Assembly (NCBI GenBank): GCA_965112735.1
Contig: OZ218956.1
Location: 1,302,001 to 1,366,000, forward strand
Source: Phaeosaccion multiseriatum
Taxonomy: Eukaryota; Protista; Ochrophyta, other classes
Direction of reading: 5' to 3'
Length of the DNA: 64,000 bases
Both the position numbers and the translations under genes were made by a program. Shown here piece after piece: positions 2,488 through 40,760 of this stretch (within the stretch, counting starts at the first letter, position 1; every line of letters begins with the position of its first letter). A model generated the notes under the pieces. The model ran no database searches and was not told where the DNA came from. It saw only the letters and a program-made list of their open reading frames with translations.

Positions 2488-2518
<31 letters not shown>

Positions 2519-5500
2519 CAAGGCACCCAAATAGTTCGCGGCGACAGACGCGATGAGAGGTCAGAGGGAGGGGGAGGAGAGGGGAGAGGGAAGAGGGGAG
2601 AGGGGGGAGGCGAGAAGGGAGAGGGGAGGGGGGAGGCGACAGAGGAGAGGGGAGGGGGGAGAGGGGAGAGAGGAGAGCGTCAAGGCTGTCTCTAACCAAA
2701 TCTAACCTGACCGAACCTGACCTAACCTGACCTAACCTGACCTAACCTGACCTAACCTGACCTAACCTGACCGAACCTGACCTAACCTGACCTAACCTGA
2801 CCTAACCTGGGTCAAGGCTGTCTCTAACCTGACCGAACCTGACCTAACCTGACCTAACCTGACCTAACCTGGGTCAAGGCTGTCTCTAACCAAACCGAAC
2901 CTGACCTAACCTGACCTAACCTAACCTAACCTGACCTAACCTGACCTAACCTGGGTCAAGGCTGATGGGCGAGGCGTCCTCCTTCGCCCCGGTGAGAAAA
3001 TCCGCAAGCTCTGCTGCCGCTCCGGCGACATTGTCTGTGGCAGCCCCCCACCCCCCCTCCTCCTCCTCCTCCTCCTCCTCGCTGTACAGCAGTGCCCAGA
3101 CGAAGTAGGGAAGGTGCGAGTCGCGGCGAGAAAGGTCCCACATGGGCACGTCCTTGCACATTGCCTCCACCGCCTCCTGCAAGTAGGTCAAATTGGGTAT
3201 ACAGATTGGGTGTATGTGAAGGGGGTTAGAGGTGTATGGGCAGGTAACGTGCCCGTACCATCTCGAGAAGCGGTGCATTGCGAGGAGCGTAAAGAGATTG
3301 GTACAGGGGTTGGGTACACAGGTGTATCAGTGACAGAAAGCACACCTGACTTCATGATTGACTTGGACTACCTACCCGCCAACCCACCCATCCACCCACC
3401 CACCCCCCCCCATCCATCCATCCACCCACCAACCCACCCATCCATCCACCAACCCACCCATCCACCCACCCACCCACCCCCACCCACCACCCCACCCATC
3501 CACTCATTCACCAACTCACCTACCCACCCATCTACCCACACCCAATGACCCACCCACCTTCATGCTCGCCCAATCGCCGAGCTTTCTGCAGCACTCCAGC
3601 GTTCGCAGATCCCACATATCCAGCTCCGTCTGGGTCGCCACCACCTCTCCCCTCCCTTCCCCGCCTGCCCCTCCCTCCTGCTCCTCGAGGCGGTGTGCGG
3701 CATCTCTCACCAGTTGGTTGTACGCCTTCATGGCGCCCTTAAAGTCGCCCCGCAGCTCGCAGTCCAGTGCCCTGCGCGTCTCCTCTCCAGTGCTCGCCCT
3801 TGCCGACAAGCCCAATAAGACTTCCTTCTCCCCCAGTTCGGCGTACAGTCTGCTCAGCTCCAGCCACGACACCTGTTCCTCCTTCTCATCCTGCTTCTCC
3901 TTGTCGGCCTCCGTCGTATCACCAACCGCACCACCTCCACCTCCACCTCCACCTCCACCACCCCTCTTGGACGTGATGTGCGCTGCCCCCTTACTCCCTC
4001 TCCCCTTTGCTGCGGTCATACTCCTCTGCTGCTTGGCCTGCTTAGCCGCGATGCTGGTGCCGAGCTGATCCTCCAATAGGAGGATGCCGGAGTGGCAATT
4101 CAGACTCCGAATAGCCGAGTTGGCAATGAGCGAAGGAGGCAAACGCAACGGCATGGGGGCAGCTGTAGCAGCAGCAGTCGCAGCAACATCAGTTGGTGAT
4201 ACAGAAAGCGTCGCCACCGCCCGGCACGCCGCGAGCAGGCACCCCACGAGCTCTGTATGCTCCTTTGACACTGTCAGCATGCGCCGCAAGGCCCCGCCTA
4301 GGCGCTCTTGCCTCTCATGCTGGTGTATCACCAACTGCTGCTGTTGTACCACCAATTGGTGATCCTGCTGGTGCTGCTCACTCCCCGTCCCGACACCTGG
4401 AAGCGCGCGTCCACCTCCTCCTCCTCCTCCTCCTCCCCCTACGTATAGATGACTGAAGAGCTGCACGAAGAGCTCCTTTGCCACTCCTCCGTCGAGCATG
4501 GCGAGGTGCTGCAGAGGCTTCAGTATGTCACTAAGAGGAATCTCAATGTCCGGGAGCTCCCCCTGCCGATACCGCCTGCGCGCGGACAAAAGGAAGGGAA
4601 GGGAGGGAGGGAGGGAGGGAGGGAGGGAGGGAGGGAGGGAGGCAGGGAGGGAGGCAGGGAGGGAGAGAGAAAGGAGGGAGGAAGGGCAAATTCTCACATA
4701 GGTGTCAATTTCTGCAGCTGCTTGTGCATCTGTGCGTACTGTACACTATTCTACTACAGGTATGTGTGACAACCTCCACTCCCCCCACCTCCAACCAAAC
4801 AAGTGTTTTAACCCTCAAAACAGGTCCCAGGTTAGCTCAATCCACCCACATCTTACTTAAAGCATACGTACCTGAGAATGGCGTCCTTCGGCGGTCTTCG
4901 TCCTTTGCCGTAGCGCCTCCGTCCGTGCCACCCCCCTCCTTGTGACTGCTGTGTAGCGCCACCTCCTCCTCCGAACCTCGGAGGAGGCGGGGGCATGAGA
5001 GCCGCCCCGTCTCCCCCTCTCCCCTCCCCTCCCCAGCCTCCACCACCGCCGGCACCGCTGTCTCCGCCAATGTTACGCAACAGCAAGGAGGTGTCCTGGC
5101 TCTGAGACAGGTACGCCGCGGTACTGCCCACAGCCGCCCCTCCTCCTCCTCCTCGTCCTCCTCCTCCCCCTCCTTGCTGGGTTTGTGTCCAGCTAAAGTC
5201 TTGCGTCGAGCGGAGTAGCCCACCTGCGCGCTGCCGTTGACTCATGCTGCTGGGGAGCCCCCCTGCCCCTCCTCCTCCGCCCACAGCCTGACTCGTCGTC
5301 CACTCGCGCTCCAAACCTTGGTCGAACTAGTATAGAGAGGATGGTAGCAGACGGAGGAGACAGAGACTCACAGATTGAGGGTCTGACTGAGTCACTGGCC
5401 GACTGCCTGACCGACTGCCTGGCCGATTGCCTGACTGACTCACTGACTGACTGACCGATAGAGTGACTGACTGACCGGCTGACTGACGAGCTGACTGACG

Positions 5501-8500
5501 ACTGACCTGAGAGAGGCTGAGCAGTTGCGAGCTCAGAGAGAACATTGGGGTCATTGGCCGTGCACGCATAGGGCCCGCTCCAAGACCGCCCAGGTCCATG
5601 TCAGTGAACTTGCAATCACCTGCAAGTCAGTCAGTGAGGCAGTCAGTAAGTCAATGAACCAGTCAGTCAGGCAAGCAAACAAGCAAGCAAGCAAGCAGAG
5701 CAAGTAGAAGAGCAAGAGAGGAAGCAATGCAAGCAGGAACGGGGGCCCTCTGCAGACTGTTGATGTATCCCTTTAGCAATACAACACCACACACGTACCC
5801 AGGCCCTTGGGGAAGAGCTGTCGGTCGAACTCGTGGGAGAGAGCCGTTACACGCAGCAGCATGAAGGTACTAAGGGATAACGTAGTGAAGTAGGGGAGTG
5901 ATAAGATGAGGGTGGTGGGAGTGGGGGGGAGGTTGGGGACGGGGGGGACGGTGGAGGCGGTGGGGAATGTGGCGAGGAGGGGGTGGCGAGGAGCGGACCA
6001 AGACAGCGAGACACATGCACGAGAGGAGGGTGGGGAGGAAGGCAGGGCCGTTAATCCCAGCAAACGACGGGAGACAATACGAAAAGAAAGAGGATCAAAG
6101 CGAACGAAAGCAAAGGGAACAACTGTGTAAACGCACCTTCACCCACCACGCCCTATCTACACCTCCAGCCATCTGCCTCTCACCTCAAGTGCAGACACTC
6201 CTGTAGCTGTCCACTACTCCCTACCTACCCAACCTCCAACGAACCACCTTTCTTGTGTGTAACTGTCATTCTAACCTATGGAAGTACAGTCACCTTTCCC
6301 TCCTTAACCCTCTCCTCCACCAACCAGTTCCTTCTGCAACTCACCTAAAGTGGAGCCACTCCTGTGCGGTGCTGGCGTCGAACATGTCCCTCATGAGCAC
6401 CTCGAGGCGGCCAGACGGCCCGACAGGAAGCAGCCCCAGAGCATCCCAAAAGTCGTACAGAGTCCGCCGAATACCCTTCCGTCCACCTCCCCCCCCTCCT
6501 CTTCCTCCTTCGCCTGCTCCTGCTGCTGCTGCTGCTGCCTGGGCTTTGATTCTCTGCGTCGGCTCGGCTTGATCAGCACCACCATGCCCGTCCTCCTCCT
6601 CCGCCTCCTCCTCCTGCAGCATGTAGTTGCTGTCTTGCCCACTGGCATACACGTCGGGAGGAGCCGCACCATCACCAACTCCTCCACCTCCACCTCGGCC
6701 GCCACCGCTGCTGTCGTTGCTGCTGTCATTGCCGCCGCTGCTGCTGCTGCTGCTGTTGACCTGTCCGAGAGAATCCATTCCCTCTGTGTCGGGGTCGTCA
6801 AGCCCCTGCAAGAGACATGCCTTTACTGACTGAGATTGGGCAGCGCTCAGGAGGGAGGAGGAGGAGGAGGAGGCACCATCCTTGCTTAGGACGAACAAGT
6901 CCACCATAATGCGATACACCTCCTCTCTGCAGTCCACGAATGTGTTGGGTGAGGTGAGCTGCAACAGCGAGTGGGGGCTGTCGGATCCGCCCAACAGATG
7001 GCGATAGTCCGCCTGGTCCAACGTGGGCAGCAGGTGTCGCACCACTCGGAGGGCATTGAGCTGAACCATCGGCACATGGCGCTTCTCCGCTCGAATATAG
7101 ATGGTACCGGGGTCGAGTAGTGCGGCAGGAAGGTGTTGTCTCAGCATCTTGAAGAGGGAAGGCTCCAGCTCCATGCTCTCGATGGCGTCCAGGGGTTGAG
7201 CCGCAAGCAGCGCGAAGAAGGCAGAGCGGGACTTTGCGTCGCAGCGACTGAGAGAGGGAGGTTGGGTAGAGGATTCGGAGATATGGAGAGTAGTGAGAGC
7301 AGTGAGAGATGGCGTAGTATGGGTAACACACCTGTCGTTCTCCTTACCTGAAGACCGAAAGCGCCTTGTTGAGCAGCTCTCTGTCGAGTATCTCTGGGAA
7401 GGCCCTCGCCACGAGCGACACACTCTTGACGAAGCGAGACGGACTCTGTGCACCCCCTTCATTGTACATGGACCGAAGCTTGCGGTGCACTTTGTTCATC
7501 AGGTCCTCCGCCTCCTTACAACTGTCAATACCTTGCAACACGAGCCGCTCCTTGTGCGCCAACGCCAGTCCCGCCGCCTCCGAAGCAGAGGCAAATACCT
7601 CCGCCCGTTGACGGTCCAAGGCGCGTACAAGCCACTTGACCAAAGCATCGGCGTGTGGAGTATCATGTGCAAACACCTGCACGCCTCTGTCGAAGAGCAT
7701 CCCGAGCAGCGACAGGCCCAACAGAAGGCGGTCCTTCGCAACGGATCCGGAGGAGTCTCGCTTAGCCTTGGAACCACCCGTGGACTGCTCCCCCGTGGAC
7801 AAGAAGTCAACGATGGACTCCATATCGAACCGCAAGGGAGGCGGAGCTCCTCCCCCTCCTCCCCTCCCTCCTGCCGCCTCTCTAGCCTCTTGCACGAGCC
7901 CCACGAAGCCATGCAGCGCTACCACATTGCTACGAAGCACGCTCTGCACAGGCACATCACCTGAAGGGATCGATCGAGGCGTGAGTGACAGTTACGTCCG
8001 TTACGTCATCAGTTGAGAGTGAGGGAGAGAGGCAGACAGATGGCCGCAGACCGCGGGAGCCAAGGAGGGCTCCTGACAGCCACCCACCTTTGGTCTCGTT
8101 ACCCCTCCTGGAGAACATGCACATGGGAAGGAGCTTGGACACGAGGGCGCACGCCTGGGGTACTCCTTGCTGCTCGGAGAAGGACAAGTGAGGCCGCCAA
8201 GGCCCGCCCAGCAACACCAGCACGTCTCTGTGTGTGTGAGAAAGAGTGTGTGCGTGAAAGAGAGAGACGAGACAGAGGGCGTAAGTGTGTGCGTGTGTGT
8301 ATGTGTGAACAAGAGAGAGAGTGTGCGTGTGTCTGTGTCTGTGACAGTTGTGTGTTTCTGTGCGTGCGTGTGGACATGAGAAATGGGAGACAACGACAGC
8401 GTACACAATATGGGCCGCAAGCAGCAAAACAAATGAAACTCTCTTCGGATCCAATCTATCCCATTCCATCCAATATACTCATATACCTCAGCATGTAGTT

Positions 8501-27504: not shown

Positions 27505-29204
27505 ATGATGGCACGGCAGGGCCTGCGTCTGGGGCAGCTTCAGCAGCTCCGCTGTGGTGTGCCCAACGGGGGGACGGGAGGAAGACTGGGGGCAAGTGGG
27601 GGGGGGGTGGGAGTAGGAGGAGGCGTCCTCGCTTTCCGCAGGGAGGCCGGGTCGGCAGGATCGGCGGGCACGGCAGCTTTCAGGTCCTCCAACCGAGGCC
27701 GAAGCTTTGGTCGGAAGGGGGGCATGGCCAAGACGCAGTCGTCTTCGCGCCCTTCCCTGTCGACAGCTACGTGGGGAGGAAGTAGCGGAGGAGGAGGAGG
27801 AGGAGGAGAGGCGATGCCAGGAATAGGGCAGACGATGCTCCTCCGCAAGTTGCAGATACAAATGCAGCAAATCCCGCGGGTGAAGGTGAGAAACCTGTAC
27901 ACGGTCATGACCAGGAAGCGCTCACTCCAACTGCTGGGCTTCAAGATCGAGACGACGCTGAGCAACCTCTGCGGCCACGGAAGCTTTGTGGTGCTGGCCA
28001 TTGCATACATGGAGTCCGACGTGCTGCTGCTGCGAGGATACGCAGTGGGCTCCATCGCGCTGTCGAGCTTGTTTCAGTTCTACCGCCCTCAGCCCCTATG
28101 GATGTAAGTGTTTTGTTTATTACTCTTGTGTGTGTGTGTGTGGAAAACCCGTTCCGTTTCGTTCTTTTCCTTGGGGGCCCGCCCCCCGCGTGCATGCGTG
28201 AAAAGGGGGGGAGACGTTTATACTTCCGTAGTAGTGACGTTTCATTTCCTCCTCCCCTCCCTCCCTCCCTCCCTCCTTCCCTCCATTCCCCAGCCCCATC
28301 TCGTGGGGGGCGGTCTTCTTCCTCATCAACACCGGATTCATTGTGTCCCTGCTGGAGGAGCGTCGCGCCGCCAGCCACATGGAGAGGGATGAGGCTGAGG
28401 TGTTCCAAGAGGTGTATGAGCCCATGGGCCTGAGTGCGCATCAATTCAGGGCGCTCTACCGCCTCGCCTCCACCCGCACGGTGCCCAAGGGCCAGGTCCT
28501 GCAGCAGGCGGGCGATCGGCAAAAGTGCGTGTACCTCATTACATCGGGCAGCGCTCAGACGGAGTTGGAGGGAGAGGCGCACTCCACGCTGGACAAGCAC
28601 GCGTACATCGGTGCGTTCGTTTGCACCGCTGGGTTGTGGCTTGTTGTCCCCTCATTCGACCCTCTCTTCTCTTTCCTCCTCCTCTCCTCCCCCCCCCTTG
28701 CGTGAGGTGTGCAGTGATGAATCATTGTTTTTGACGTCTCTTTACAGTAAAATGCTGAATGGGCGATATTAATTTTTTTGCCAGTTATCCCTCTGAGCAC
28801 CACCTCCGCTCACTTCACTTCCCTTCCCTTCCCTCTCCATTGAAGGCAGATGGCCTCGTTTTGCATTATTATTAGTATTATTTATTGGAGAGGCAACATC
28901 CGTGCTAATCATTCCTACCTGCCCTTTGCACCTGTCTGCGCCTTGACTGACTCTGCAGGCAGCATCGCCTTTCTGCGCTATGCTCTGTTGGAGGGAGAGG
29001 ACGACAGCCCGCCACTCGTCACAACCACGATCCGCACGCAAAGGGAAACGAGGGTCCTCGCATGGGACTTTCAAGAGGTGAGTTGGAGAGGAGAGGAAAG
29101 GGAAACAGAATGCAAAATCGAAGCACATGCACAAAAAGCAACTCTGGTGCGGCCACGGAATCTGAATTTGTTTGACCCCCGAGCCCCCCCCCCGTCTTCT
29201 CGCG

Positions 29205-29243
<39 letters not shown>

Positions 29244-29961
29244 GTCTCTCTCTCTTCAGCTCAAGGAGTTTCTGCTGGCCAATCCCACCATCAAGTCCGC
29301 CTTCAGCACGAGCATCTCCGCGGACCTTTCCTCGGCCATTGACGAGTCCCGCAGCCTCTTTAACCGTTACAGAGACGTGCTCAAAACGTCATTGGACTAT
29401 GGTGAGTGCACTCCCTTGGAGAAGCGCAAGCTCGGCCACTATCGAGAGACGCATGGGGTGACCAAGGGGGTGCATGAACAGGCCCTCCACGAAATGGGAT
29501 GGACAGACCACGAGTTCTCGCTGGGCTTTAAGGAGACCACTCCGATTTACAAGTACGAGGTGCTGCTTCGGGAGGAGGTGAAGGACGGGGTGGTGTCGGA
29601 GGAGGGTCGCAAATTCCTGCGTGCCTATCGGGGGAGGAACGGCATCACAGCGGAGGAGCACTTGCTGGCGTTGGAGAGTCTCGGCTGGACCATGGACAAT
29701 TGGGAGGGGGGGAGGATCCCCAACAAGGGCAACAACGGTACCAGCAGCAGCAACAACAACAACAGCAGCACCAGCAACAGCAAGAGCAAGAGCAAGTCCT
29801 CATCTACTGACGCAGCTGCTGCCCCCTCCAGCACCACCACCACCACCACCATCGGAGCCGCAGCTGCCGCACCCGTGGTCGTAGCCAGCAGCAGCATCGG
29901 TGCCAAGGCGGCGGTGGTGGCCACGAGCAGCAAGCGACGCAGCGAGAAAGAAGAGGGCTGA
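27505..29961 (+). CDS. Popeye-like membrane protein with a cyclic-nucleotide-binding-fold domain and two C-terminal helical repeats; exons 27505-28103, 28294-28610, 28959-29077, 29260-29961
   Basis: Three hydrophobic segments (HGSFVVLAIAY..DVLLLR..QPLWIPISWGAVFFLIN), then E..VFQEVYEPMGLSAHQFRAL and a cNMP-like core (KGQVLQQAGD..VYLITSG..YIGSIAFL..VLAWD). The start codon is uncertain. Confidence 0.8.
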
Positions 29962-31390
29962 ATGGGAAGGTACATGAGGGCGCTGACACAATAGGGCTGA
30001 AGGAAAAGAAGGGGAGGGCAGAGGAGGGCCGTGATACTGTACCAGCAGCGCATGTGATGTGTGTATAAATATGTGTGTGTGTGTATGTGTGTGCCATCAA
30101 CACCACGCGACAGATGTGCACGGTGCCCAGGCAGGGGGTCTTGAAAGCCGTCTTGAAAGCCCTCAAGCTTTCTTGAGCTTGGTCAGTGGAGAGAGGAGAG
30201 GAGAGGGGAGGAGAGGAGGGCACCCGCGGGGCATAGGGTGCGGCCGTAATGCCGTGCACGCATAGCACCTTCGTGGTGGAGCTGTTCTTCTTGTGTTCTG
30301 TGAAGTAGGGGAAGGAAGGACGGGGGAGAGAGGCATTTTCCTGCAGAAACAGGTTTGAGTGTGTTTCAAGGTCGGGAACGGGGTTCCGAGCAGCCGGGGC
30401 AGTTGGTTGGCCCCAGCCCTTTGAACCGCCACCACCCCGAGCAGGGAGAGGTGTACATAGCGAATGGGGAGAGAAAGAGAGAGAGGGGGGGGGGGGTGGG
30501 ATGGTGCACGTTGGGAAGTGGGAGAGATGGGTCAACGTGTTGCTTGGTGTAGTCACACGAGTTGTTCAAGGCCGCCGTCCCCAGTGGTCGGTTGGGGCAG
30601 AGGGCGTACAATTACAATTCAGCACGTACCCCTCCCTGCTAAGGTTCAACAATGAAACATTAAACGAAAGGCCCAAAAACTCCCTTCTCTTCTTTTATTC
30701 TTCATAAATCTTTCCCTACCAATACTTCGGTACGTACAAAGTACAATATACACTATTTGTCAGACGTCTGTGGACGAGAGGCCCTGAAACGCAAACCAAC
30801 GTTGTATACAAACGGCGCTACACCCCCCCCCCCCCCCCTCCCACGAGACCTCCAGTGTCGGTGCTGAAGTTAATGTACTTCCGAGGATCACACGGAAACC
30901 TCGGCTCCTCCCTAGCCTTACTAAGCAGGGGCCAAGGCTTGCGCTTGATCCTTGTTGGTACATCGAACCAAGCAAGAAGCGGTCACTCCAGGGGGTACCG
31001 CTTCGACGGGGTCGGCTGGGCTGCTGACTGTCGGCTGCAAACCACACAAGGCATCCATTTACCAATCCATACACCCATACATCTGTCCATCTATCCACCC
31101 ATCCCTCCACCCACCCCTCCACCCACCCTCCCATCCATCCATCCATCCATCCATCCATCCATCCCCCATGGTGACAAGACGGAGACGCCTCTTAGCACCA
31201 AGCGACCCGTCGTACGTCAACGCTTAACTCCCGAGTGCAAGCAAAGCAAAGCTCTCTCCGGTGCGGTTTAAGCTGGTGGGGACAACAGTGACATGGGCCT
31301 CTGACTCTGGTCCTGGCTCCGACTCTCCCCGCCTACAGCCTCCTCAGCCTCCTCTTGCGTCTGCCTCTGTCTCTGCCCCTCCCCTTGTCC

Positions 31391-34300
31391 TTATCCCTCC
31401 TGCCCCGGTGCCTTCTTGTTTGGCTGTTCTGCGGCCCCTGCTGCTTCCCCGATCCCAACCCCACCCTCGGCCGCCGCCTTTGCTCCAACGTCCATCGACA
31501 CGGCGGGAGACAGAGTGGGTGGCGTGGCTATGCCCGTGTGCATGATACGCTCAAAAGCCTCAAAGTCCAGAGTGCCGTCGCTTGCCACACCTGCTTCTTC
31601 CAGCATCTGGGCGACTTCAGAGTCGTCAAACTGTGGCGGGGAGGTGAGGAGAGGGGAAGGGAGGGGAGTGGAGGGGAAGGGAGGGGAGGGGAAGGGAGGG
31701 GAGGGGAAGGGGAAGGGAGGGGAAGGGAGGGGAGGGGAGGGGAAGGGAGGGGAGGGGAGGGGAGGGGAGGGGAGGGGAGGGGAGGGGAGGGGAGGGGAGG
31801 GGAGGGGAGGGGAGGGGAGGGGAGGGGAGGGGAGGGGAGGGGAGGGGAGGGGAGGGGAGGGGAGGGGAGGGGAGGGGAGGGGAGGGGAGGGGAGGGGAGG
31901 GGAGGGGAGGGGAGGGGAGGGGAGGGGAGGGGAGGGGAGGGGAGGGGAGGGGAGGGGAGGGGAGGGGAGGGGAGGGGAGGGGATGAGAAAAAGGCGGCGA
32001 TGAAGACTCGTACTCCCAAAATACACACGCCAACCCCCCCCCGTTGAGGGTGTGGCTGCTTCTCTCCTCTAGGGTCCCCTCTGCTGCTTCCTCCCCTCTG
32101 GCGTCCCCTCTGTTGCTTGCTGGTTTCGTCTCCTCGTACTCGAACTTGCCTGCACCAGGAAGCGCTTTATGTCTGCTGCGGTAATGACTCCGCTGCGCTT
32201 CCGGTCGAACTTGTCGAACACCGTCTGCAGCGCTTGCTCGCAGTGGCTGCGAGGGTCTCCGAGTAGAGACGCTGCCAGGAAGTCATTGTATCTGGGGCGG
32301 GTGGGAGGCATTCAGAGGGGGGGGGGGGGAGGGGTGCGGTGGGGTGGGTGGATGGGTGAGGAGAGGGGCGAGACAGCCTGGCGAGGCAGCATAGAGGCTC
32401 GTCGCGAAGGCACAGATAGAACAGCAGCAGCAAGCATGCACAATGCACGCACAATGCACAAATCTACTGACCTGATCTTCACCCTGTTGTCCCGCCCATC
32501 GTTGCGCAGGCGGTGCTCCAGCTGCTGCCCCTGCTGCTGCCCCTGCCCTTGCCCTCTCCCCTCCTCCTCCTCCTCCTCCTCCTCCTCCTCCTCCTCCTCC
32601 TCCTCCTCCTCCTCCTGTTGTTGTTGCTGGTGTTGCTGCTGCAGACATGGAAGCTGCTTCATCCCACCACCACCCCCACCACCTCCACCACCATCACCAT
32701 TCCCCGACATATCTTCAGCCACCTCAACGTCCTGCTGTACCCCGTCAATCATAGACTGGATGCTGCTCTTCTCCGCCGTCGCCAGCCCCGCCCCACCCAA
32801 AACCTCCCCCACCTCATCCAGCGCCAGCAGCCCAGTGCCCTCCTTGTCCAGCCTCTGAAACTGTCGCCTCAAGTCAGCCACTTGAGATGAGTCCAGGGAA
32901 AAAGCCACCATTTGCAAGAGAAGCTTGCGAAGCGTCGCCAACCTGTGAAAGTGCCGTAACCGTCGGAGCACGGATTCCTGTGAATGACCACTGCCGCTTG
33001 AGGGAGGGCAATTCTGTCGCTCTTCGCTGTCGACAACCCCCCCATCCACCACACCCCTCCCACCTCCTCCTCCTTCTCCTCCTCCTTCTCCTCCTCCTCC
33101 TCCTCCTCCTTCCTCTTCTTCCCTCGCCTTCTCCTCCTCCTCCTCGGCCGCCACCGCCTTGAGTATCCACGGGTGTTGCGAGGCCTCCTCTGCCGTCATG
33201 CGCTCAACGGGGTCCAGCACCAGCAGCTGCGACACAAAGTCCTTCGCCTCTGAAGTTACTTGTAAATTCGATGGCCATGTCCACTGCGCCTGCTTCACCG
33301 CTGCTAGTACTTCAAAATCGTCACCGCCCCGAAACGGCGACTGCCCAGCTAGAAGCATATAGGTCATGACCCCGAGGCTCCACAGATCACACGCCTGCGT
33401 GTACGAGCCCTTTAGCACCTCGGGCGCAATCGTGTACGGCGTACCCACCGGGGTGTGCATTATCATTGGTGGCGGGACCTCCCCGGTGAGGCTGGTGCTG
33501 CTGCTGACGCTGTTGCTACGACTGCCTCGGCTGCTGCTCCGTGAGAGCTGACGACGGCTTCCTTCGTCATGAACACCGTCGTTGCCACTGCCGCTGCCGT
33601 CACCGGTGCCAGTGCCGCGTTTTCTGCTGCTGTTACTGGTACTGTTATGGCCCAAAGGAATGTGCTTTCTCAGTCCCCACAGAGAAGGGGACTCCTCCGC
33701 AGGTTTGGGGGGGTCATCCTTGCGCATTTGGGGGGGTCGGCTCGGGCGGGGGGTGCCTCGAGTCATGCGAAAGTGCCTGAAGAGGGGAGGGGGGGGGGAG
33801 AGAGAAGGGGGGGGGGGAGCGAGAGAGAACGGAGGGGGCGAGAGTGTGTGAGAGAGAGCGAAAGCGAAGGAAAGGGAGAGAGAGGGAGAATGACTACGCA
33901 GTGAGGGGGTTACAGAATTGATAATGGGAAGGAGGGGTAGGCAAAGAGAGAGGGGGGGGGCGTGGTCAATCTACGCTTGTCAGTGTCGGATGGCAAGGAA
34001 AGAAAGACCACCTTCGTACCCACACCCACCACCAAGACCACCACCACCCACCTTCACACCCACTCCCAAACCTCGACCTTACGAAATCCCTCCCCCCTTA
34101 CCTCGACATTCCAAAGTCGATGAGCTTAAGCTCTGCCTCAGGCCCCTCGCTCTCAAACACCCAATTCTCCAGCTTGAGGTCCCGGTGACAGATACCGTTC
34201 TCGTGACAGTGCCGCACCGCCGAGAGCATCTTCCTCACCAGCTTGGCGCACATGGCCTCCGAGTAGGTCCCCCTCCTCTGCAGTCGATGCAGCAGCTCCC

Positions 34301-34830
34301 CGCCAGTGCAAAGCTCCATGATGAGGTCGATACTTCCTCTCCCAGGGCTCTCATAAATCTCGTGAAGTCGCACAATGTTGGGGTGGTTGAGGGAGGACAT
34401 GATCTCAATTTCGTTCCGCAGCTCTTCAAGCTTCATGAAATCGTGCAATCTGCTTGGTTGGTTTGGTTGGGTGGGTGGGAGGGTGTTGGACATGGGCAGA
34501 GGGGCAGAGGAGGTGAGTCGGCATGGTGATGGTGACCACGCGGCAAGTACACGACCCGCTGACCGACCGACTGACGAACCGACGGACGAGCCGACCAAAA
34601 ACACCTGACCGACCGAATGACCGACTGACCGACTGACCGCCCGACCCACCGACCGATCGGCCGACAGACCCACCCACCATGCACCCACCCACGCACCCAC
34701 GTACGCACCCACCCACACACCCACCTGGTGAGGTTGAGCGTCTTCATGGCGTAGAGTTTGCCAGTTCTCTTATGCCGCACCACCCGGACCACGCCCGAGA
34801 TGCCCACCCCGAGCAGCCCCCCAGCCTTGA
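31391..34830 (-). other. CDPK-like Ser/Thr kinase domain plus calmodulin-like EF-hand lobe of the fusion gene
   Basis: LGVGISGVV..YAMK, ELCTGGEL, HRDLKLEN, DFG, GTPYTIAPE, DLWSLGV, HPW, junction LRRLRHFHRLATLRKL, and EF-hands DKEGTGLL, YNDFLAA, DRKRSGVI, DGTLDFEAF. Confidence 0.93.
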
Positions 34831-35270
34831 CCTTTACCTCCGCCTCAATCTCCTTGCCTCCCCCTATCCCCTCTCTACCAGCCCCCTTCTCCATGTCCTC
34901 GCCCTTCTTCTCCTCCACCTTGTCTTGCTGCTGTATCACCAACTGCTGCTGCTGCTGCTGCTGCTGGTGGTGGTGGTGGTGGTGGTGGTGGTGCTCTACG
35001 TTATCAGCGTCCACAGCATCGTAGTGTGCCCACACGTCCCCAACTTCTCCCAGGATAAGGGACCGAATCATCGTGGCTCTGCTGTTTGCGTCTCCCCCTC
35101 GAAGATCCTGTCCCCCACCCAGCCCCGAGTCAAGTCCTTTCTGCCGTCTTCGCCCCCTGAGGCTCTGGTCTAGATGGAAGGATTTGCGCCTGAACCTGTG
35201 TGTCACGCTCGCCCGCCGCTCATGCTGGTTGGTGGTAGTGAGTGATGAAGTGAGTGAGAGAGAAGGAGAG

Positions 35271-35335
<65 letters not shown>

Positions 35336-36771
35336 ATGGTAAGAAGAGATGGTGGTGCAAAAGCAGGGAGGGCAGTGACAAGGTGTGTTATTGTAGCGTT
35401 CCCAATGGAGCAAGTAGCGTGGAAAGAGAGAGGTGAGAGGAAAGAAAAGACTACACACGCACACGCAGCAGAAGTATATGGGATACAGCAGCAGTCATAT
35501 GGGCAGCAGCATTTGCCGTAGCTACGTAAACGTACATACCTCGAGGAGGTCCTTGGTGTGTCCGAGCCTCCCCCCCGCGTCCGTCTGTCGCATGTCCATG
35601 AGCTCCTCCAGGCACGGCTTGAGCCTCGCGTAGGGGCTGCATCATCAGGTGCCATCAGGTGCCATCAGATGCCAAGGAAGGAAGGAAGGAAGGAAGGGAG
35701 GGAGGGAGGGAGGGAGGGAGGGAGGGAGGGAGGGAAGGAGGGAGGGAGGGAGGGAGGGAAGGAGGGAGGGATGGGGAGGGAGGGAGGGAGGGAGGGAGGG
35801 AGGGAGGGAGGGAGGGAGGGAGGGAGGGAGGGAGGGAGGGAGGGAGGGAGGGAGGGAGGGAGGGAGGGAGGGAGGGAGGGAGGGAGGGAGGGAGGGAGGG
35901 AGGGAGGGAGGGAGGGAGGGAGGGAGGGAGGGACGGACGGACGGAGGGAGAAAGGAAGGGTCAAAACTAGAACAGAAAAGAGGAGAAGCAAGCAGCAGCA
36001 CGACCACCATCACTCCAGCGCGGCGATACGACCATCTATCTTCCATGCGATGAGAGGCCCCCACCCGCACCTGCAAACAACCAACACACTTACTTACCTG
36101 TGGTACTGCACCTCGCGGGTGTGATGCGCTCTTCTCTTCCCTCCCTCTGCCGCGGGATGGTGCGACGCCCCGCCGATCTGGAGCAGGCCGTCTCTGTCTC
36201 TAGGCTTCCTCCGCTTCCCTCTTCGTTGCTTGTCGTCGCCAGACGCCCCTGCTGCTCGCACACGCCGGGGCACGGGGGGTGAGGGGAGGGGAGGGCGGAG
36301 CGAGGATGGCAGTGGATGAAGGGGGACGGGTAGTACAAGCAAAAGAGTGAATCCAAGACAACTTCCCGACTTGCCGTACCTGCGGCATCCATGCCCATGG
36401 ACAGTTGCCAATGGCGGAGGTGAAAGTAGTAGCGAGCGAAACACCCGCTGCTCACGCGAACATTGTACTGCAGCACCTGTGCAAGTAGGAAGAGGAGGAG
36501 GAGGAGGAGGAGGAGGAGGAGGAGGAGGAGGAGGAGGAGGAGGAGGAGGAGGAGGAGGAGGAGGAGGAGGAGGAGGAGGAGGAGGAGGAGGAGGAGGAGA
36601 GGGAATGATAGGGTTCGTCGGTGGGATAGGGTATAGGGTACGCACCAGCACAAATCCCTCGTTTGCAAGCAGGTGTGTGAGTGTTTTCAAAGGTTTCATC
36701 AGACGGCTCACTTGGCAAGTGACGGCGACAACGGCGAGTGGCGAAAAGACCAGAAAAGCAAAACACACACA

Positions 36772-36826
<55 letters not shown>

Positions 36827-38193
36827 CACAGACGGAAAGGATGCCCACCGAATGCCCACCAAATCCATTCAAGGCACCCACCTGCAGTACCGCCACCTCC
36901 AGCTCGTTGATGCGGCGGAGGTTGATGCGACCGACCTTTGGAGCGGTCAACGTTCGCCGGGAGGAGGAGAAGGAGAAGGAGGACAAAGAGGGCGCGTGAG
37001 TGAGCCGCACAGCAGTCACACAGCAGACAGGCAGCACAAAGACGACAGAAGGACAAGCGAGAGTTTAGCGCTCGATCGCTCGCTTGGTTTCCGGGGTTGT
37101 GTATGTTAGTGAGTTAGGTGCGTAAGTTACGTGAGTTACGCACCTTGGAGAAGTCGCAGTTCCACATGCTAAGGTCGTCCCACACTTTGCTGGCGAGCAC
37201 GAGGCCCGACAGCAAGATGCTGTGCCAGTTTGTCTCACAGATGCGCAGCTTGCCCGCGGTTTCGGTAAGCACCTTCTCGATGTAAATGAGGCTCATAATG
37301 ACGCAGTCCTTCTCCAGTTGGGCTGTCTTGAAGATGTAACTGTAAAACTCGAGGACCTGTTTTGTGTGTTTGGTCGTTTGTGGATGTTTTGTATCGAGTG
37401 GAAACAGTCAGGGAATGTGCCATACCGTCAGCCGTCAGCTGAGTTGGGTGGGTCTCTATGCCGTTGATGAAGGCAGGCTCTCCCTCCCTTAGCACCTCCC
37501 CTCTCCCCCGCAATCACATGCATTCAAGGACCCAATGACCAAAAATTCCCACCAAGATGGAAGACACCCAAGCGCATCTACCTACATTGGTGCAGTACCT
37601 ACCAGACACCCAAGTGCATGCACCTACCATGCACCCAAGTGCATGTACCTACCAGACACCCAAGTGCATGCACCTACCATGCACCCAAGTGCATGTACCT
37701 ACCAGACACCCAAGTGCATGCACCTACCATGCACCCAAGTGCATGTACCTACCAGACCCCCCAAGTCCATGTACCTACCAGACACCCAAGTGCATGCACC
37801 TACCATGCACCCAAGTGCATGTACCTACCAGACCCCCCAAGTCCATGTACCTACCAGACCCCCCAAGTCCATGTACCTACCAGACACCCAAGTGCATGCA
37901 CCTACCATGCACTCAAGTGCATGTACCTACCAGACCCCCCAAGTCCATGCACCTACCATACACCCAAGTGCATGTACCTACCAGAACCCAAGTGCATGCA
38001 CCTACCTGGTCATAGGTGGGCAGGACGGGGTGGCAAGACATCATCGGCGCCACCCCTCCCGAGGGCCTCACGCGAATGACCGACCCTCCCGCCCGGGAAG
38101 AGCACGGGCTGCCCCGAATGGCCGAGTCATCGAAGATGTGAAACTGTCATCGGTCGTCGGGCGTCGGAGATACAAGAGAGAAAGAGAGAATGA

Positions 38194-38239
<46 letters not shown>

Positions 38240-40760
38240 GTGAGAGAGAGAGAGAGAGAGAAAGGGAGGGAGGGAGGGAGGAAGAGAGGCGCCGCAAATG
38301 GCCAATCGAATGATGAGAAGGCAAGAAAAGGAAGGGAGCCAAATCAGCATCAATCAATCAATCAATCATTTTCTCCCAGGTCAAGTGATTCTACATCTAC
38401 AACCTTCTTGTGTTGCTCTGTGTGCTCATTCAGCACCACCCTCACTGCCTCACCTCCGGCGCGATGGGCCACTTCTGCCGGGCGCCCTCCATGATGTGGT
38501 GGTGGAGCGCGAGACAAGCCACCTACATGGTTACAGTTACACGAACGGAGGGAAGGGGATGGTCAATCAGTCACTCCCTTTGTGCGATGTGGTTTCTCAC
38601 CACACCGTCCTTATCCGAACCGCAAGCACAGCATGCAAAGACGTCCCAACAACTCTCTATAAATACGACGAGCACCCTTCCTATTGGATACGCCCGCTTT
38701 CCACCCTCAACATCCCACCAAGCCGTGGCGTGGCAACTGCCTTGCTACACACCTTGCTTGCTCTCCCGAAGCACTCACTCACTTACTCACTCACTCACTC
38801 GCTCACTCACTCACTTACTCACTCACTCACTCACTCACTCAATCACTCACTCAATCACTCACTCACTCACTCACCCGCTCACTCACTCACTCACTCACTC
38901 AATCACCCGCTCACTCACTCGCTCACTCACTCACTCACTCACTCACTCACTCACTTACTCACTCTCTCACTCAATCAATCAATCAATCAATCAACGCCAA
39001 TTGCTCACCTTCATCATTCCCTCAGTGTCCAGATCGTCCATAGTGAGGCAGATCTGCACGCTGGACGTGCTGTTGCAGCGACGCAGAAGCAGACGAGGTT
39101 TTTTCTGTGCGATGCCCACGAGACAGGAGGAGAGACAAAACGGTTAAAGGCGGAGAAAAGGGCAAGGGGGGGGTGGGGTAACAAGGCATACAATGTACAG
39201 TATATAAGTATACCCAAGGCACCCCACAACTGCACACCCAGCACCCACACCCATTCCACATCCATATGGGTGCACAAATACGCACACACACACACATACA
39301 CACCAACACAACAACACACACACACACCCTTGCCCTGGCCTGACCTGTCCCAGCCTCCTGCTCCTGAGCGAGACGTGCTCCTGCATGAGGCTCACATCAA
39401 GCTGCGGCGTCGTGCGGAACAGGTGGTGTGGCTTGTGCGCTCGGGCGGTGGTGTTAAGGCTGAGTCAAGGGGGTCCGGGGAGGAGGGGGGGACGAAGGCA
39501 GCAAATGACACATGAGAACGCAAACAAAGAAGCCTTTCTTTGCCTCTCTTGGAATCGCTGGATTCATAGCTTCGAAGCCAAGTGTAAAATACATCCCACC
39601 CCCGAAAGGGCGAGAGAGTGAGAGAGATGGCAGAGACACCAACAGCGTAGTCGGTGCCTTGCTTCTCCCTCTCGGTCCCACACTACTCTAACGTTCCGCC
39701 CCTCCCCTCCCCTGGTATACCCTCGAAGATCAAAGAGCCTCGCTTTCATCCCTTCTCACCTCCCGCCCACAAAGTTCTGCCACTGGTGCGGGTCTGGATC
39801 TACGTCGTCGTCGTCGCTTTCGCTGCTCCACGAGTCCTCCTCCGTGCTTGACTTGGCCCTGGCACGCTCCTGTGGACGGTAGCACGCAGGACAAAGGTGG
39901 GGCAGAAGGTAGGTAGCGCGTGCGAGACGAAGCGGGGGGGGGCAATTGGTGAGGGGCAAGAGATCCTACACACCAAGCTGCAAGGTACACACCAATGACA
40001 TGGCAGAGGAGAAAGGAAACATAGAACTTTCTGAGTGTTTTCGGTTTCTGTAATACTGCTGCTGCTGCTGCTGCAGTTCGACGAGGAGGAAAGTAGCATA
40101 CGGAGCGAACACCCAACCCACCTGCAGCTCCTGCTGCCTCTTCCATACGTTCTCCTCCATCTCTGTGAAGAATTTCTCCATCTGTGGAGAAGTACGCTTC
40201 TTCTTGTGATCGCTCGGACGCCTGCTCGGGAGGTTGCGTATCGCAGTGCCATCACCACGGACCAGCAACGACAACGGAGGGGGTTAGCGTTTTATATGGG
40301 GAGAGGGTTCGATTACGGTGTACATGGAATAGAAAAAAGGGGGGGGGGGGGGGTATAGGACAAGGGAAGAGCACAAAGGGAGAGGCCGGTGGAAGCTCAA
40401 CGGGGGGGTGAACAGCTACCAAAACAACGGTGCGAATGCTACTTGCCTTTGAAGAGGGGTTGGAGCTGCGGTACCTCTGCCATTGGGGGGAAGACCTTGG
40501 GCCGGCAAAGGGTGCATTTCTCCAAAATTGAAGACGGTTGTGTCACCGTCCCCTTCGCCACTGCTGCTACTGCTGCTGCTGCTGCTCTTCCTGGCGCTGA
40601 CCAAGTACCCTCCAGCTCCTAAGGCATCTGAGCCACGCCGCGTGCCCTCCTCCTCCGCCTGCTCCCTCCGGCGCTCCGCCTCTTGGTGCTGGTGCTGCTC
40701 CAGCCGCTTGGGCTCCTCGGGCTGGCCGGCATATTGCTCGCACGAAGAGTGATTCCCCAT
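31391..40760 (-). CDS. Cyclin Y - calcium-dependent protein kinase (CDPK-like) fusion protein, 17 exons, about 1362 aa
   Basis: Exons 40760-40447, 40221-40122, 39869-39760, 39459-39345, 39104-39009, 38522-38454, 38143-38006, 37356-37144, 36935-36882, 36476-36380, 36248-36098, 35636-35540, 35224-34725, 34449-34102, 33776-32472, 32291-32150, 31630-31391. All intron phases are consistent and there is no internal stop. Confidence 0.72.
31655..31982. repeat. (GGGGA)n pentamer array upstream of the last acceptor of the kinase gene
   Basis: Direct inspection. Confidence 0.95.
35696..35932. repeat. (GGGA)n intronic array
   Basis: Direct inspection. Confidence 0.95.
37595..38005. repeat. 25/50-bp minisatellite starting at a splice donor
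   Basis: Unit GTACCTACCAGACACCCAAGTGCAT/GCACCTACCATGCACCCAAGTGCAT, about 16 subunits. Confidence 0.92.
38772..38993. repeat. (TCAC)n/(TCAA)n intronic array, (GTGA)n on the sense strand
   Basis: Direct inspection. Confidence 0.9.

What the first reader, a model, noticed from the sequence alone, without database searches (positions are those of the whole stretch)
31391..40760. Cyclin Y fused in frame to a calcium-dependent (CDPK-like) kinase in one gene
Seen: the cyclin Y exons continue without a stop through three linker exons (36248-36098, 35636-35540, 35224-34725) into a complete kinase, junction and EF-hand lobe. Every intron phase matches across 17 exons (4089 nt). The critical 35539-35225 interval looks like an intron (GAG|GTATGT..(CT)n..CAG) and lacks the AT-rich patch seen at other gene ends here. 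Established: cyclin Y is a membrane-anchored activator of PCTAIRE/PFTAIRE CDKs in trans, and CDPKs are Ca2+-activated and do not use cyclins. Inference: an N-myristoylated (MGNHSSC) protein that couples Ca2+ sensing to CDK recruitment or activation, or uses the cyclin box for substrate docking. I know of no described protein with this architecture.
Basis: partly seen in the sequence, partly recalled or inferred. Interest (0 to 1): 0.9.

Follow-up and report, generated by a model that had tools for sequence, protein, structure and literature searches.

The report
Cyclin Y fused to calcium-type kinase
This alga has one gene that joins a membrane-anchored cyclin Y to a CDPK-like protein kinase; the join is real and conserved in other algae and probably foraminifera, it already sits unremarked in public databases, and no paper I could find describes it.

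Summary
A 17-exon, 4089-nt minus-strand model (40760-31391) is open throughout. It joins a cyclin Y box to a complete CAMK/CDPK-type kinase, a junction segment and a degenerate EF-hand lobe.

No transcript data could be obtained for this organism: the only runs holding the locus are genomic DNA. The case for one gene therefore rests on comparison.
- Chrysoparadoxa and Scytosiphon proteins align in single HSPs across cyclin box, linker and kinase.
- Residues on both sides of all three linker splice junctions are conserved.
- Transcript-derived proteins (MMETSP; a transcript filed under Bolivina argentea; four RNA-like contigs) carry the same architecture.
- In three foraminifer-associated genomic loci, the last cyclin-box helix, the linker and the whole kinase lie in one uninterrupted ORF.
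- The fused kinases form one clade (SH-aLRT 99) among 124 CDPK-like kinases.

The architecture is not new to databases. The Ectocarpus member (CBJ30826.1 / D7FRN5) is filed simply as "calcium-dependent protein kinase". I found no paper describing it.

Proposed mechanism, by inference: the tethered basophilic kinase phosphorylates the RRxS 14-3-3 sites flanking the cyclin box, as AMPK does in animals, and so gates recruitment of a CDK. Calcium sensing in this copy is uncertain because most EF loops are degenerate.

The parts
40447..40760 (-). Exon 1. Start codon at 40760. N-terminus MGNHSSC (G2, S6, C7: myristoylation/palmitoylation-type motif as in animal cyclin Y). GC donor.
   Evidence: MG start shared with P0162, P0164, P0289 and an internal MG of P0163.
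39345..40221 (-). Exons 2-4 (40221-40122, 39869-39760, 39459-39345): cyclin Y N-terminal region with conserved blocks (FFxEME; HQWxNFVGGxLNTxxRxHKPHH).
   Evidence: tblastn to L005/L006/L007.
39009..39104 (-). Exon 5. Basophilic Ser motif RRCNSTSS (39083-39060), conserved as RRNS[ST]NS in all fused orthologues and positioned like human cyclin Y pS100 (RKYSSCS).
   Evidence: alignment. Human peptide ARKYSpSCSTIF in PMC13168255. HMMER register to 9r2i_D.
36380..38522 (-). Exons 6-10 (38522-38454, 38143-38006, 37356-37144, 36935-36882, 36476-36380): single cyclin box of cyclin Y type.
   Evidence: Pfam PF08613 in E8. Human cyclin Y 9r2i_D E 2.5e-15. 41-48% identity to fused orthologues.
36098..36248 (-). 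Exon 11, linker 1. Conserved motif RDRDGLLQIGG, present only in the modelled frame.
   Evidence: ERDNLFNIGG in P0162, ERDNLLLIGG in P0163, ERNSLFSIAG in P0007.
35540..35636 (-). Exon 12, linker 2: SPYARLKPCLEELMDMRQTDAGGR, the most conserved linker block; GC3 0.94.
   Evidence: SPYSRLPPCLEELVDM in P0162; YSKLPPCLEELV in P0007/L005.
35225..35539 (-). Intron 12 (315 nt), the critical interval: GTATGT donor, (CT)n tract, CAG acceptor, phase 0. Holds the in-frame TAG 35524-35522 that would end the protein if the intron were retained.
34725..35224 (-). Exon 13. Starts HERRASVTHRFRRKSF (two RRxS sites at 35218-35204 and 35191-35177), then LILGEVGDVWAHYD, a His/Gln run, and kinase subdomains I-II (GVGISG, YAMK).
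   Evidence: Residues on both sides of the E12/E13 joint are conserved (window KDLLE|HERRA; P0289 RDLKSHEEEA; P0163 RDHQRHERHK).
33161..34449 (-). Exon 14 (34449-34102) and the first part of exon 15: rest of the kinase domain with intact HRDLKLEN, DFG and APE. It includes a 93-aa S/R/G-rich activation-loop insert (33766-33488) found only in this species.
   Evidence: Pfam Pkinase. Motifs. The insert has 0 stops in frame against 2 and 6 in the other frames. Best PDB matches are apicomplexan CDPKs.
32472..33160 (-). Rest of exon 15: G/E-rich spacer, CDPK-type junction segment, EF1 loop DKEGTGLLALDE (32848-32813), then a G/Q/E low-complexity insert.
   Evidence: Alignment of junction and EF1 to PfCDPK2 4mvf..
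31391..32291 (-). Exons 16 (32291-32150, GC donor; EF3 loop DRKRSGVITAAD at 32206-32171) and 17 (31630-31391; degenerate EF4; stop TAA 31393-31391).
   Evidence: Pfam EF-hand_6 E 3.5e-5 in E16, nothing in E17..
30640..30764 (-). AT-rich patch with AATAAA-like sequence about 0.65 kb after the stop: probable polyadenylation region of the whole gene.

Best explanation
What it is (shown by comparison). One gene at 40760-31391 on the minus strand has 17 exons and encodes a 1362-aa protein. In order it carries:
- an N-terminal myristoylation-type start;
- a cyclin Y N-region with a conserved RRxxS motif;
- a single cyclin Y box;
- a conserved ~130-aa linker carrying two further RRxS sites;
- a catalytically complete CAMK/CDPK-type kinase;
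- a CDPK junction segment and a degenerate calmodulin-like lobe.

It belongs to a conserved but undescribed family of cyclin Y-CDPK fusions. Members occur in ochrophyte algae (Ectocarpus, Scytosiphon, Discosporangium, Chrysoparadoxa, probably Phaeothamnion), in an MMETSP protist, and in foraminifer-associated data.

How it probably works (inference). In animals, cyclin Y activates PCTAIRE/PFTAIRE CDKs only after two Ser sites flanking its cyclin box are phosphorylated and clamped by a 14-3-3 dimer. One of those sites is phosphorylated by AMPK, a CAMK-group kinase. The kinase for the other site is unknown.

Here a basophilic CAMK-group kinase is tethered directly behind the cyclin box, with RRxS motifs on both sides of the box. 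I propose three steps:
1. The fused kinase phosphorylates these sites in cis or within dimers.
2. The phosphorylated sites license 14-3-3 binding.
3. That permits recruitment or activation of a CDK partner at a membrane.

The junction/EF lobe would give Ca2+ or other allosteric control where it is still functional.
For: Gene model
- The model is open, with consensus splice sites.

Orthologue alignments across the fusion
- Single blastp HSP: window aa 112-803 to Chrysoparadoxa P0162 aa 54-635, 45% identity, E 9e-176.
- Single blastp HSP: window aa 452-803 to Scytosiphon P0163 aa 481-764, E 6e-82. Both cross the linker and all three linker junctions.
- Motifs are conserved on both sides of each junction, and only in the modelled frames.

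Genomic continuity in relatives
- Uninterrupted ORFs hold the last cyclin-box helix, the linker, the kinase and the EF lobe: L005 nt 1727-3703, L006 nt 5914-7839, L007 nt 1137-2771.

Transcript-derived full-length fusions
- P0161: MMETSP, annotated 'type:complete', 1224 aa.
- P0289: EukProt, labelled Bolivina argentea, 965 aa.
- P0065: four independent 3.2-3.4 kb contigs with coincident 5' ends and one 3093-nt ORF.

Other support for a single gene
- Pfam finds Cyclin + Pkinase + EF-hand in P0065.
- The kinases of the 10 fused proteins form one clade, SH-aLRT 99, among 124 CDPK-like kinases.
- No AT-rich gene-end patch lies inside the gene.

Support for the mechanism
- The catalytic motifs are intact.
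- RRNS[ST]NS is conserved where human pS100 lies.
- AMPK phosphorylates cyclin Y S326 and thereby promotes CDK16 binding (PMC7042329).
- 14-3-3 binding to both sites is required for CDK16 activation, and the S100 kinase is unknown (PMC13168255).
Against: Against the single-gene reading
- There is no RNA evidence from this organism. The runs found are genomic DNA, and the one metatranscriptome matched only low-complexity stretches.
- The first 52 codons of E13 show no codon-position GC bias.
- Intron retention after E10, E11 or E12 would give a stand-alone cyclin Y ending within a few codons. Cyclin-only isoforms therefore cannot be excluded.

Against the mechanism
- Nothing was tested biochemically.
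- The post-box RRxS sites are only loosely conserved (RHKS in Scytosiphon, KRKRFSS in foraminifer-type, none obvious in P0065/P0161).
- They could not be aligned to human S326.
- Several family members have degenerate catalytic loops: CRDLCLRH in P0289/P0007; HRDLKLES with IEFG in P0065; HRDLNLEN with IDVG in P0161. Kinase activity is therefore not a universal requirement of the family.
- The EF-hands in this copy are mostly non-canonical.
- Whether this genome encodes a PCTAIRE-like CDK or a 14-3-3 protein was not examined.
Confidence: 0.85

Rival explanations
1. Two adjacent same-strand genes were merged by a chance in-frame model. In this reading a stand-alone cyclin Y gene ends at TAG 35524-35522 (or TAA ~36095), and a separate CDPK-like gene starts at Met 35071. 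An ancestral fusion may have been split in this lineage.
For: No transcript data exist for this organism. Stops follow each linker donor within a few codons. An in-frame Met lies at 35071. The 154 nt between the acceptor and that Met have flat codon-position GC.
Against: The putative intergenic gap would be only 315 nt, without the AT-rich patch seen ~0.65 kb after the real gene end. The residues encoded just before and just after the joint are conserved with orthologues in which the region is one ORF or one transcript. The Met is not conserved in any orthologue. The frame is preserved through three successive linker introns.
Confidence: 0.07
2. The fusion is real, but the cyclin box acts in cis on the fused kinase. 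It would either bind the kinase's alpha-C/N-lobe as a built-in activator, as cyclins do for CDKs, or serve only as a docking or scaffold module for substrates. No CDK partner is involved.
For: There is a precedent for kinase-cyclin fusions in which self-regulation was proposed: CDKs with C-terminal cyclin domains in Phytophthora and ciliates (PMC3019232; Stentor preprint).
Against: CAMK/CDPK kinases are not known to need cyclins (established knowledge). The cyclin Y-specific features that serve CDK activation in animals are retained: the N-region, the pS100-like motif and the single box. A ~130-230-aa, partly low-complexity linker separates the two modules.
Confidence: 0.2
3. The fusion is real, but the kinase half of the family is drifting towards a pseudokinase or scaffold and the calcium lobe is vestigial. 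The protein would then be functionally a long cyclin Y with a structural C-terminal appendage.
For: Catalytic-loop substitutions occur in the foraminifer-type and P0065/P0161 branches. The EF loops in the window copy are degenerate, and large low-complexity inserts sit in its activation loop and EF lobe. The Phytophthora CDK-cyclin fusions are also predicted to be inactive.
Against: In the window, Chrysoparadoxa and brown-algal copies every catalytic motif is intact: GxGxxG, VAIK Lys, alpha-C Glu, HRDLKxxN, DFG and APE. The kinase domain is the best-conserved part, at 55-68% identity.
Confidence: 0.12

Closest known systems
Animal cyclin Y (CCNY/CCNYL1), activator of CDK14/CDK16-18 together with 14-3-3
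   Same: Single cyclin box that matches human cyclin Y and nothing else in the PDB. N-terminal MGxxxS(C) lipid-anchor motif. A basic Ser motif at the position of pS100. Basic Ser sites after the box.
   Different: About 850 further residues follow the box: a conserved linker, a complete CAMK-type kinase, a junction and EF-hands. The equivalence of the post-box sites to S326 is not shown. No partner CDK has been identified here.
Calcium-dependent protein kinases (CDPK/CPK) of plants, apicomplexans, ciliates and oomycetes
   Same: The kinase domain is closest to apicomplexan CDPKs in the PDB (PfCDPK2 4mvf E 1e-27, CpCDPK, TgCDPK1/3). A junction-like segment and EF1 align to PfCDPK2. Order is kinase, junction, EF lobe.
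   Different: The N-terminal variable domain is replaced by a whole cyclin Y. The activation loop has a 93-aa insert. Only 1-2 of 4 EF loops look competent, and a long low-complexity insert sits inside the lobe.
CDK-cyclin fusion proteins of Phytophthora, ciliates and Theileria (Judelson & Ah-Fong 2010, PMC3019232; Stentor kinome preprint 10.1101/168187)
   Same: One polypeptide carries a protein kinase and a cyclin fold in SAR-group protists. Some members have degenerate catalytic residues.
   Different: Those are CMGC/CDK kinases with Cyclin_N + Cyclin_C at the C-terminus. Here the cyclin is cyclin Y-type with a single box at the N-terminus, and the kinase is CAMK/CDPK-type with EF-hands.
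Ectocarpus siliculosus CBJ30826.1 / UniRef100_D7FRN5 'calcium-dependent protein kinase', with Scytosiphon CAM9226548.1, Chrysoparadoxa CAM9309871.1 and Discosporangium CAM9191729.1
   Same: Same family and same order of modules. 45-48% identity in the cyclin part and up to 68% in the kinase core. The linker motifs are shared.
   Different: The window copy is longer (1362 aa) because of species-specific low-complexity inserts. The Ectocarpus and Discosporangium models skip the equivalent of exon 13 and part of exon 14; I read these as probable annotation gaps.
WW-domain cyclin Y-like proteins of diatoms and oomycetes (e.g. 'Cyclin-Y-like protein 1' of Phytophthora)
   Same: Cyclin Y-type box in stramenopiles, 35-40% identical to the box of the fused family.
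   Different: They carry a WW domain and no kinase. They are a separate paralogous architecture.

Membership tests
Cyclin Y | Single cyclin box most similar to cyclin Y | tested here: met
   E8 alone matches human cyclin Y 9r2i_D at E 2.5e-15, the only PDB hit. Pfam PF08613 E 5e-8. The orthologue P0162 box matches 9r2i_D at E 1.3e-25.
Cyclin Y | N-terminal myristoylation/palmitoylation motif (MGxxxS/T, nearby Cys) | tested here: met
   MGNHSSC at 40760-40740. An MG start recurs in P0162, P0164, P0289 and L005. This is sequence motif only; lipidation was not tested.
Cyclin Y | Two phospho-Ser 14-3-3 motifs flanking the box (human S100, S326) | tested here: inconclusive
   Upstream motif RRCNSTSS / RRNS[ST]NS is conserved and in register with human RKYSS100CS. 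Downstream RRAS and RRKS are present but only loosely conserved and could not be aligned to S326.
Cyclin Y | Binds and activates a PCTAIRE/PFTAIRE-type CDK | not testable with these tools
   Only this window was available. No partner search or binding assay was possible.
CDPK (calcium-dependent protein kinase) | CAMK-group Ser/Thr kinase domain with intact catalytic residues | tested here: met
   Pkinase in E14 and E15. GVGISG, YAMK, HRDLKLEN, DFG and APE all present. Top PDB hits are CDPKs.
CDPK (calcium-dependent protein kinase) | Autoinhibitory junction directly after the kinase domain | tested here: inconclusive
   Segment VLRRLRHFHRLATLRKLLLQMVAFSL aligns to the PfCDPK2 junction (second stretch, weak). 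It is separated from the kinase end by a ~55-aa G/E-rich spacer.
CDPK (calcium-dependent protein kinase) | Calmodulin-like domain with four Ca2+-binding EF-hands | tested here: inconclusive
   Pfam sees only EF3, at E 3.5e-5 and 23.6 bits (cutoff 25). The EF1 loop DKEGTGLLALDE is plausible. The EF3 loop has Lys at position 3. EF2 and EF4 are degenerate, and an 80-aa insert sits between EF1 and EF2. Orthologues P0065 and P0001 score well.
Cyclin Y-CDPK fusion family (undescribed; Ectocarpus D7FRN5 type) | Cyclin Y box, conserved linker (ERDxLxxIxG; YxxLPPCLEELV; GGR) and clade-specific kinase in one polypeptide | tested here: met
   Single-HSP alignments, linker motifs, and the kinase clade with SH-aLRT 99. 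The one-polypeptide status in the window itself is inferred from the splice model, not from RNA.
CDK-cyclin fusions of oomycetes and ciliates | CMGC/CDK kinase domain with C-terminal Cyclin_N/Cyclin_C | tested here: not met
   The kinase is CAMK/CDPK-like and the cyclin is N-terminal with a single box. Architecture described in PMC3019232.

The most novel reading that the evidence does not exclude
The fusion is a self-priming, signal-gated cyclin. The tethered CDPK-type kinase phosphorylates cyclin Y's own 14-3-3 sites, including the S100-equivalent site whose kinase is unknown in animals. A Ca2+ (or other) signal at the membrane would then directly switch on a PCTAIRE-like CDK. This would be an ancient module shared by stramenopile algae and foraminifera, and it would point to a CAMK-family kinase as the missing S100 kinase in animals.
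Probability: 0.2. Interest if true: 0.8.

Novelty: new variant of a known kind. Interest (0 to 1): 0.6.

Why it matters
Cyclins are defined by partnership with CDKs. A cyclin covalently joined to a non-CDK, second-messenger-type kinase has not, as far as I could find, been discussed in the literature.

Gene fusions often record functional links. This one suggests that a CAMK-type kinase and cyclin Y act in the same pathway. That fits the finding that AMPK phosphorylates cyclin Y S326 in animals, and the statement in the 2026 CDK16/cyclin Y/14-3-3 structure paper that the S100 kinase is still unknown.

The family gives a directly testable model for how calcium or energy signals could be wired to atypical CDKs at membranes.

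It also shows that database names hide the cyclin half of these proteins: the Ectocarpus member is called only "calcium-dependent protein kinase".

Occurrence in both ochrophyte algae and foraminifer-derived data raises a question of ancient origin versus transfer within the SAR group.

Tried and rejected
1. RNA evidence. The look-up of sequencing runs returned four runs holding 95-97% of the words. Read laying showed their contigs to be colinear with introns, so they are genomic DNA. The one metatranscriptome laid only on G-rich and low-complexity stretches at 33756-33969 and 34612-34825. I then asked for the part beside it, as the tool proposed, so introns 10 and 11 were never laid.
2. The window's own protein is not in either protein library. 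Exact look-ups were therefore pointless.
3. The ESM Atlas look-up of exon 13 gave only unnamed fungal clusters at low recognition. I judged it uninformative.
The single-protein scan with exon 14 found one locus, L007.
5. I considered that the 93-aa activation-loop insert might be a missed intron. I rejected this provisionally: there is no usable GT...AG pair at its borders, and it has 0 in-frame stops against 2 and 6 in the other frames.
6. I considered an internal start at Met570. The Met is not conserved.
7. Structure prediction was not run. The tool returns no inter-domain contacts or PAE, so it could not discriminate between the mechanisms.
8. I could not identify the organisms behind GCA_024449685.1, GCA_024449705.1 and GCA_024449895.1. 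Only PJEL01 could be traced, to unassigned contigs of a Globobulimina metagenome.

Full report
**1. The observation**

The 17 exons are:

| Exon | Coordinates |
|---|---|
| E1 | 40760-40447 |
| E2 | 40221-40122 |
| E3 | 39869-39760 |
| E4 | 39459-39345 |
| E5 | 39104-39009 |
| E6 | 38522-38454 |
| E7 | 38143-38006 |
| E8 | 37356-37144 |
| E9 | 36935-36882 |
| E10 | 36476-36380 |
| E11 | 36248-36098 |
| E12 | 35636-35540 |
| E13 | 35224-34725 |
| E14 | 34449-34102 |
| E15 | 33776-32472 |
| E16 | 32291-32150 |
| E17 | 31630-31391 |

They sum to 4089 nt and translate to 1362 residues with no internal stop. Fourteen introns are GT-AG. Two (introns 1 and 16) are GC-AG with the same AG|GCAAGT donor.

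Pfam on single exons finds Cyclin (PF08613) in E8, Pkinase in E14 and E15, and a weak EF-hand in E16. E8 alone matches human cyclin Y (PDB 9r2i chain D) at E 2.5e-15, and nothing else in the PDB.

- If intron 12 is retained, the frame ends at TAG 35524-35522.
- The first Met of the kinase half is at 35071-35069.
- The only AT-rich patch between 30640 and 45626 lies 0.65 kb after the stop at 31391, with none inside the gene.

**2. One gene or two?**

No transcript evidence could be obtained. The runs that hold the locus give contigs colinear with the introns, so they are genomic DNA. The only RNA run, a metatranscriptome, laid on low-complexity sequence alone. Intrinsic signals are mixed. E12 has strong coding periodicity (GC by codon position 0.69/0.41/0.94) and E11 moderate. 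The first 52 codons of E13 have none.

The question was settled by relatives. A profile-free search of 1.84 billion representative proteins with exon 15 did not find the window's own protein. It did return three proteins that also match the cyclin half or the linker:
- P0065 (1030 aa) has Cyclin 330-429, Pkinase 581-833 and EF-hands 880-1001.
- P0001 (Discosporangium mesarthrocarpum, CAM9191729.1) carries the end of the cyclin box, an E11/E12-like linker, then kinase and EF-hands.
- P0007 carries the linker, kinase and EF-hands.

Word-indexed searches from P0065 and P0162 added further members:
- P0161, an MMETSP transcript annotated 'type:complete', 1224 aa.
- P0162, Chrysoparadoxa australica CAM9309871.1.
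- P0163, Scytosiphon promiscuus CAM9226548.1.
- P0164, Ectocarpus siliculosus CBJ30826.1 / UniRef100_D7FRN5, named "calcium-dependent protein kinase".
- P0290, Phaeothamnion confervicola, partial.
- P0289, 965 aa, filed under the foraminifer Bolivina argentea in EukProt.

The window protein aligns to Chrysoparadoxa in one HSP from residue 112 to 803 (45% identity, E 9e-176). It aligns to Scytosiphon from 452 to 803 in one HSP (E 6e-82). Both run straight through the linker and all three linker splice junctions.

In the multiple alignments each junction is bracketed by conserved residues that exist only in the modelled frames:

| Junction | Window | Orthologues |
|---|---|---|
| within E11 | RDRDGLLQIGG | KERDNLFNIGG |
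| E11/E12 | QYH\|SPYARLKPCLEELMDM | FTSPYSRLPPCLEELVDM |
| E12/E13 | KDLLE\|HERRA | RDHQRHERHK (Scytosiphon); RDLKSHEEEA (P0289) |

Three kinds of evidence do not depend on gene prediction.

(a) Three genomic loci encode one uninterrupted ORF. It holds the last helix of the cyclin box (LQFSVRVDASTFARYYFRLRHW), the linker, the entire kinase and the EF lobe. Earlier cyclin Y exons lie just upstream on the same strand. The loci are:
- L005 nt 1727-3703, from GCA_024449685.1.
- L006 nt 5914-7839, from GCA_024449705.1.
- L007 nt 1137-2771, from PJEL01. These are the unassigned contigs of a Globobulimina metagenome, per PMC6783311.

(b) P0161 and P0289 come from transcriptome assemblies.

(c) P0065 sits on four independently assembled contigs of 3.2-3.4 kb. 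Their 5' ends coincide within about 20 nt, and they consist of one 3093-nt ORF with short AT-rich UTRs. That is the signature of an mRNA.

A maximum-likelihood tree was built of 124 kinase domains, drawn from the best CDPK-like matches plus the further fused family members. It places the ten cyclin-linked kinases, the window's included, in one clade with SH-aLRT 99. This argues for a single origin of the fusion.

I put the probability that the window encodes the fused protein at about 0.9. Cyclin-only isoforms by intron retention remain possible.

**3. Anatomy of the protein**

- Start: MGNHSSC, with G2, S6 and C7 as in animal cyclin Y. MG starts recur in the Ectocarpus, Chrysoparadoxa, Scytosiphon and Bolivina-labelled proteins.
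- Before the box: RRCNSTSS, conserved as RRNS[ST]NS in every family member. It is in register with human RKYSS(100)CS.
- The box: 41-48% identical to the orthologues.
- The linker: two conserved blocks, then HERRASVTHRFRRKSF with two RRxS sites. These are basophilic sites of the kind CAMK/PKA-type kinases prefer (established knowledge).
- The kinase: all catalytic motifs present (GVGISG, YAMK, alpha-C Glu, HRDLKLEN, DFG, APE). Its closest solved relatives are apicomplexan CDPKs, and the PfCDPK2 alignment extends weakly into the junction and EF1.
- Species-specific features: a His/Gln run, a 93-aa S/R/G-rich activation-loop insert (open in frame, with 2 and 6 stops in the other frames), and G/E and G/Q/E runs.
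- The calmodulin-like lobe is eroded. EF1 is plausible, EF3 is weak (Lys at loop position 3), and EF2 and EF4 are degenerate.
- Elsewhere in the family the catalytic loop is itself degenerate: CRDLCLRH in the foraminifer type; HRDLKLES with IEFG in P0065; HRDLNLEN with IDVG in P0161.

**4. Mechanism**

Shown: the architecture, intact catalytic residues, conserved RRxxS motifs around the box, and conservation of the whole arrangement.

From the literature:
- Cyclin Y activates CDK16 only when S100 and S326 are phosphorylated and bound by a 14-3-3 dimer.
- S326 is phosphorylated by AMPK, a CAMK-group kinase, and this was also seen after ionomycin.
- The S100 kinase is unknown (PMC13168255 and PMC7042329).

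Inferred: the fused CAMK-type kinase primes its own cyclin Y moiety for 14-3-3 binding and CDK recruitment at a membrane. I give this roughly 0.3.

The rivals are cis-regulation or docking without a CDK, and a drift towards a pseudokinase or scaffold. They are listed with their tests in the rival explanations.

**5. Comparison and novelty**

Kinase-cyclin fusions are known, but of another kind. They are CDKs with C-terminal Cyclin_N/Cyclin_C in Phytophthora, ciliates and Theileria (PMC3019232; Stentor preprint). The present family has an N-terminal cyclin Y and a CDPK-type kinase.

It has been in public databases since the Ectocarpus genome, under a name that ignores the cyclin half. Six literature searches combining cyclin Y or cyclin domain with CDPK, EF-hand, brown alga or stramenopile found no description of it. 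The held library omits most subscription journals, so this absence is not proof.

I therefore rate it a new variant of a known kind. The window gene is a new member of an existing but undescribed family.

Earlier notes of this scan call the genome an ochrophyte alga, which fits the closest relatives found here. They also list other unverified kinase fusions in the same genome. The scan had not found this fusion on other DNA.

**6. Verdict**

The fusion is real with high probability. The functional reading is plausible but untested, and the calcium part is doubtful for this copy. Interest 0.6.

Noticed in passing
P0291-P0404; no window coordinates: Diatoms and oomycetes carry a large separate family of 570-1300-aa proteins that combine a WW domain (PF00397) with a cyclin Y-type box. 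Some Phytophthora members are named 'Cyclin-Y-like protein 1'. This is a second stramenopile-specific cyclin Y architecture.
   Followed up: no
L005 nt 1727-3703, L006 nt 5914-7839, L007 nt 1137-2771: The fusion also occurs in foraminifer-associated data: Globobulimina metagenome contigs PJEL01, a transcript filed under Bolivina argentea, and three very fragmented NCBI assemblies (GCA_0244496xx/98xx). There the catalytic loop is degenerate (CRDLCLRH; HRDLRLHH in L007). Whether these are foraminiferal genes or come from an associated eukaryote is open.
   Followed up: partly
window 33488-33766 (-): A 93-aa Ser/Arg/Gly-rich insert sits between DFG and APE of the kinase. It is absent from all orthologues and open in frame. 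It could be a regulatory phospho-loop, or less likely an unrecognised intron.
   Followed up: partly
window 31638-31983, 35675-35950, 36487-36599, 37590-38006, 38772-38993: At least eight of the gene's 16 introns hold a long microsatellite or minisatellite array: (GGGGA)69, (AGGG)68, (AGG)38, a 25/76-nt repeat x16, and (CACT)55 on the + strand. These arrays blocked read laying and may hamper assembly and annotation of this genome.
   Followed up: no
window 40441-40446 and 32144-32149 (-): Two GC-AG introns with the identical donor AG|GCAAGT occur in one gene. This suggests that GC donors are fairly common in this genome.
   Followed up: no
window 28500-29960 (+): A convergent neighbouring gene on the + strand ends about 700 nt from the AT-rich patch at 30640-30764. 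The two genes therefore appear to share a 3' intergenic region.
   Followed up: no
P0164 (Ectocarpus CBJ30826.1) and P0001 (Discosporangium CAM9191729.1): Both public gene models jump from the linker motif ...GGR straight to kinase subdomain V. They omit the equivalent of exon 13 and the first part of exon 14 (kinase subdomains I-IV). These look like annotation errors rather than real deletions.
   Followed up: partly
same genome, other pieces (scan notes s1-350154, s1-357192, s1-343290): Earlier first-stage notes list further kinase fusions in this genome: Vta1/MIT-CDPK, Set2-cyclin-CDK-like and F-box-CDK-like-cyclin. If real, this alga is rich in kinase and cyclin domain shuffling.
   Followed up: no
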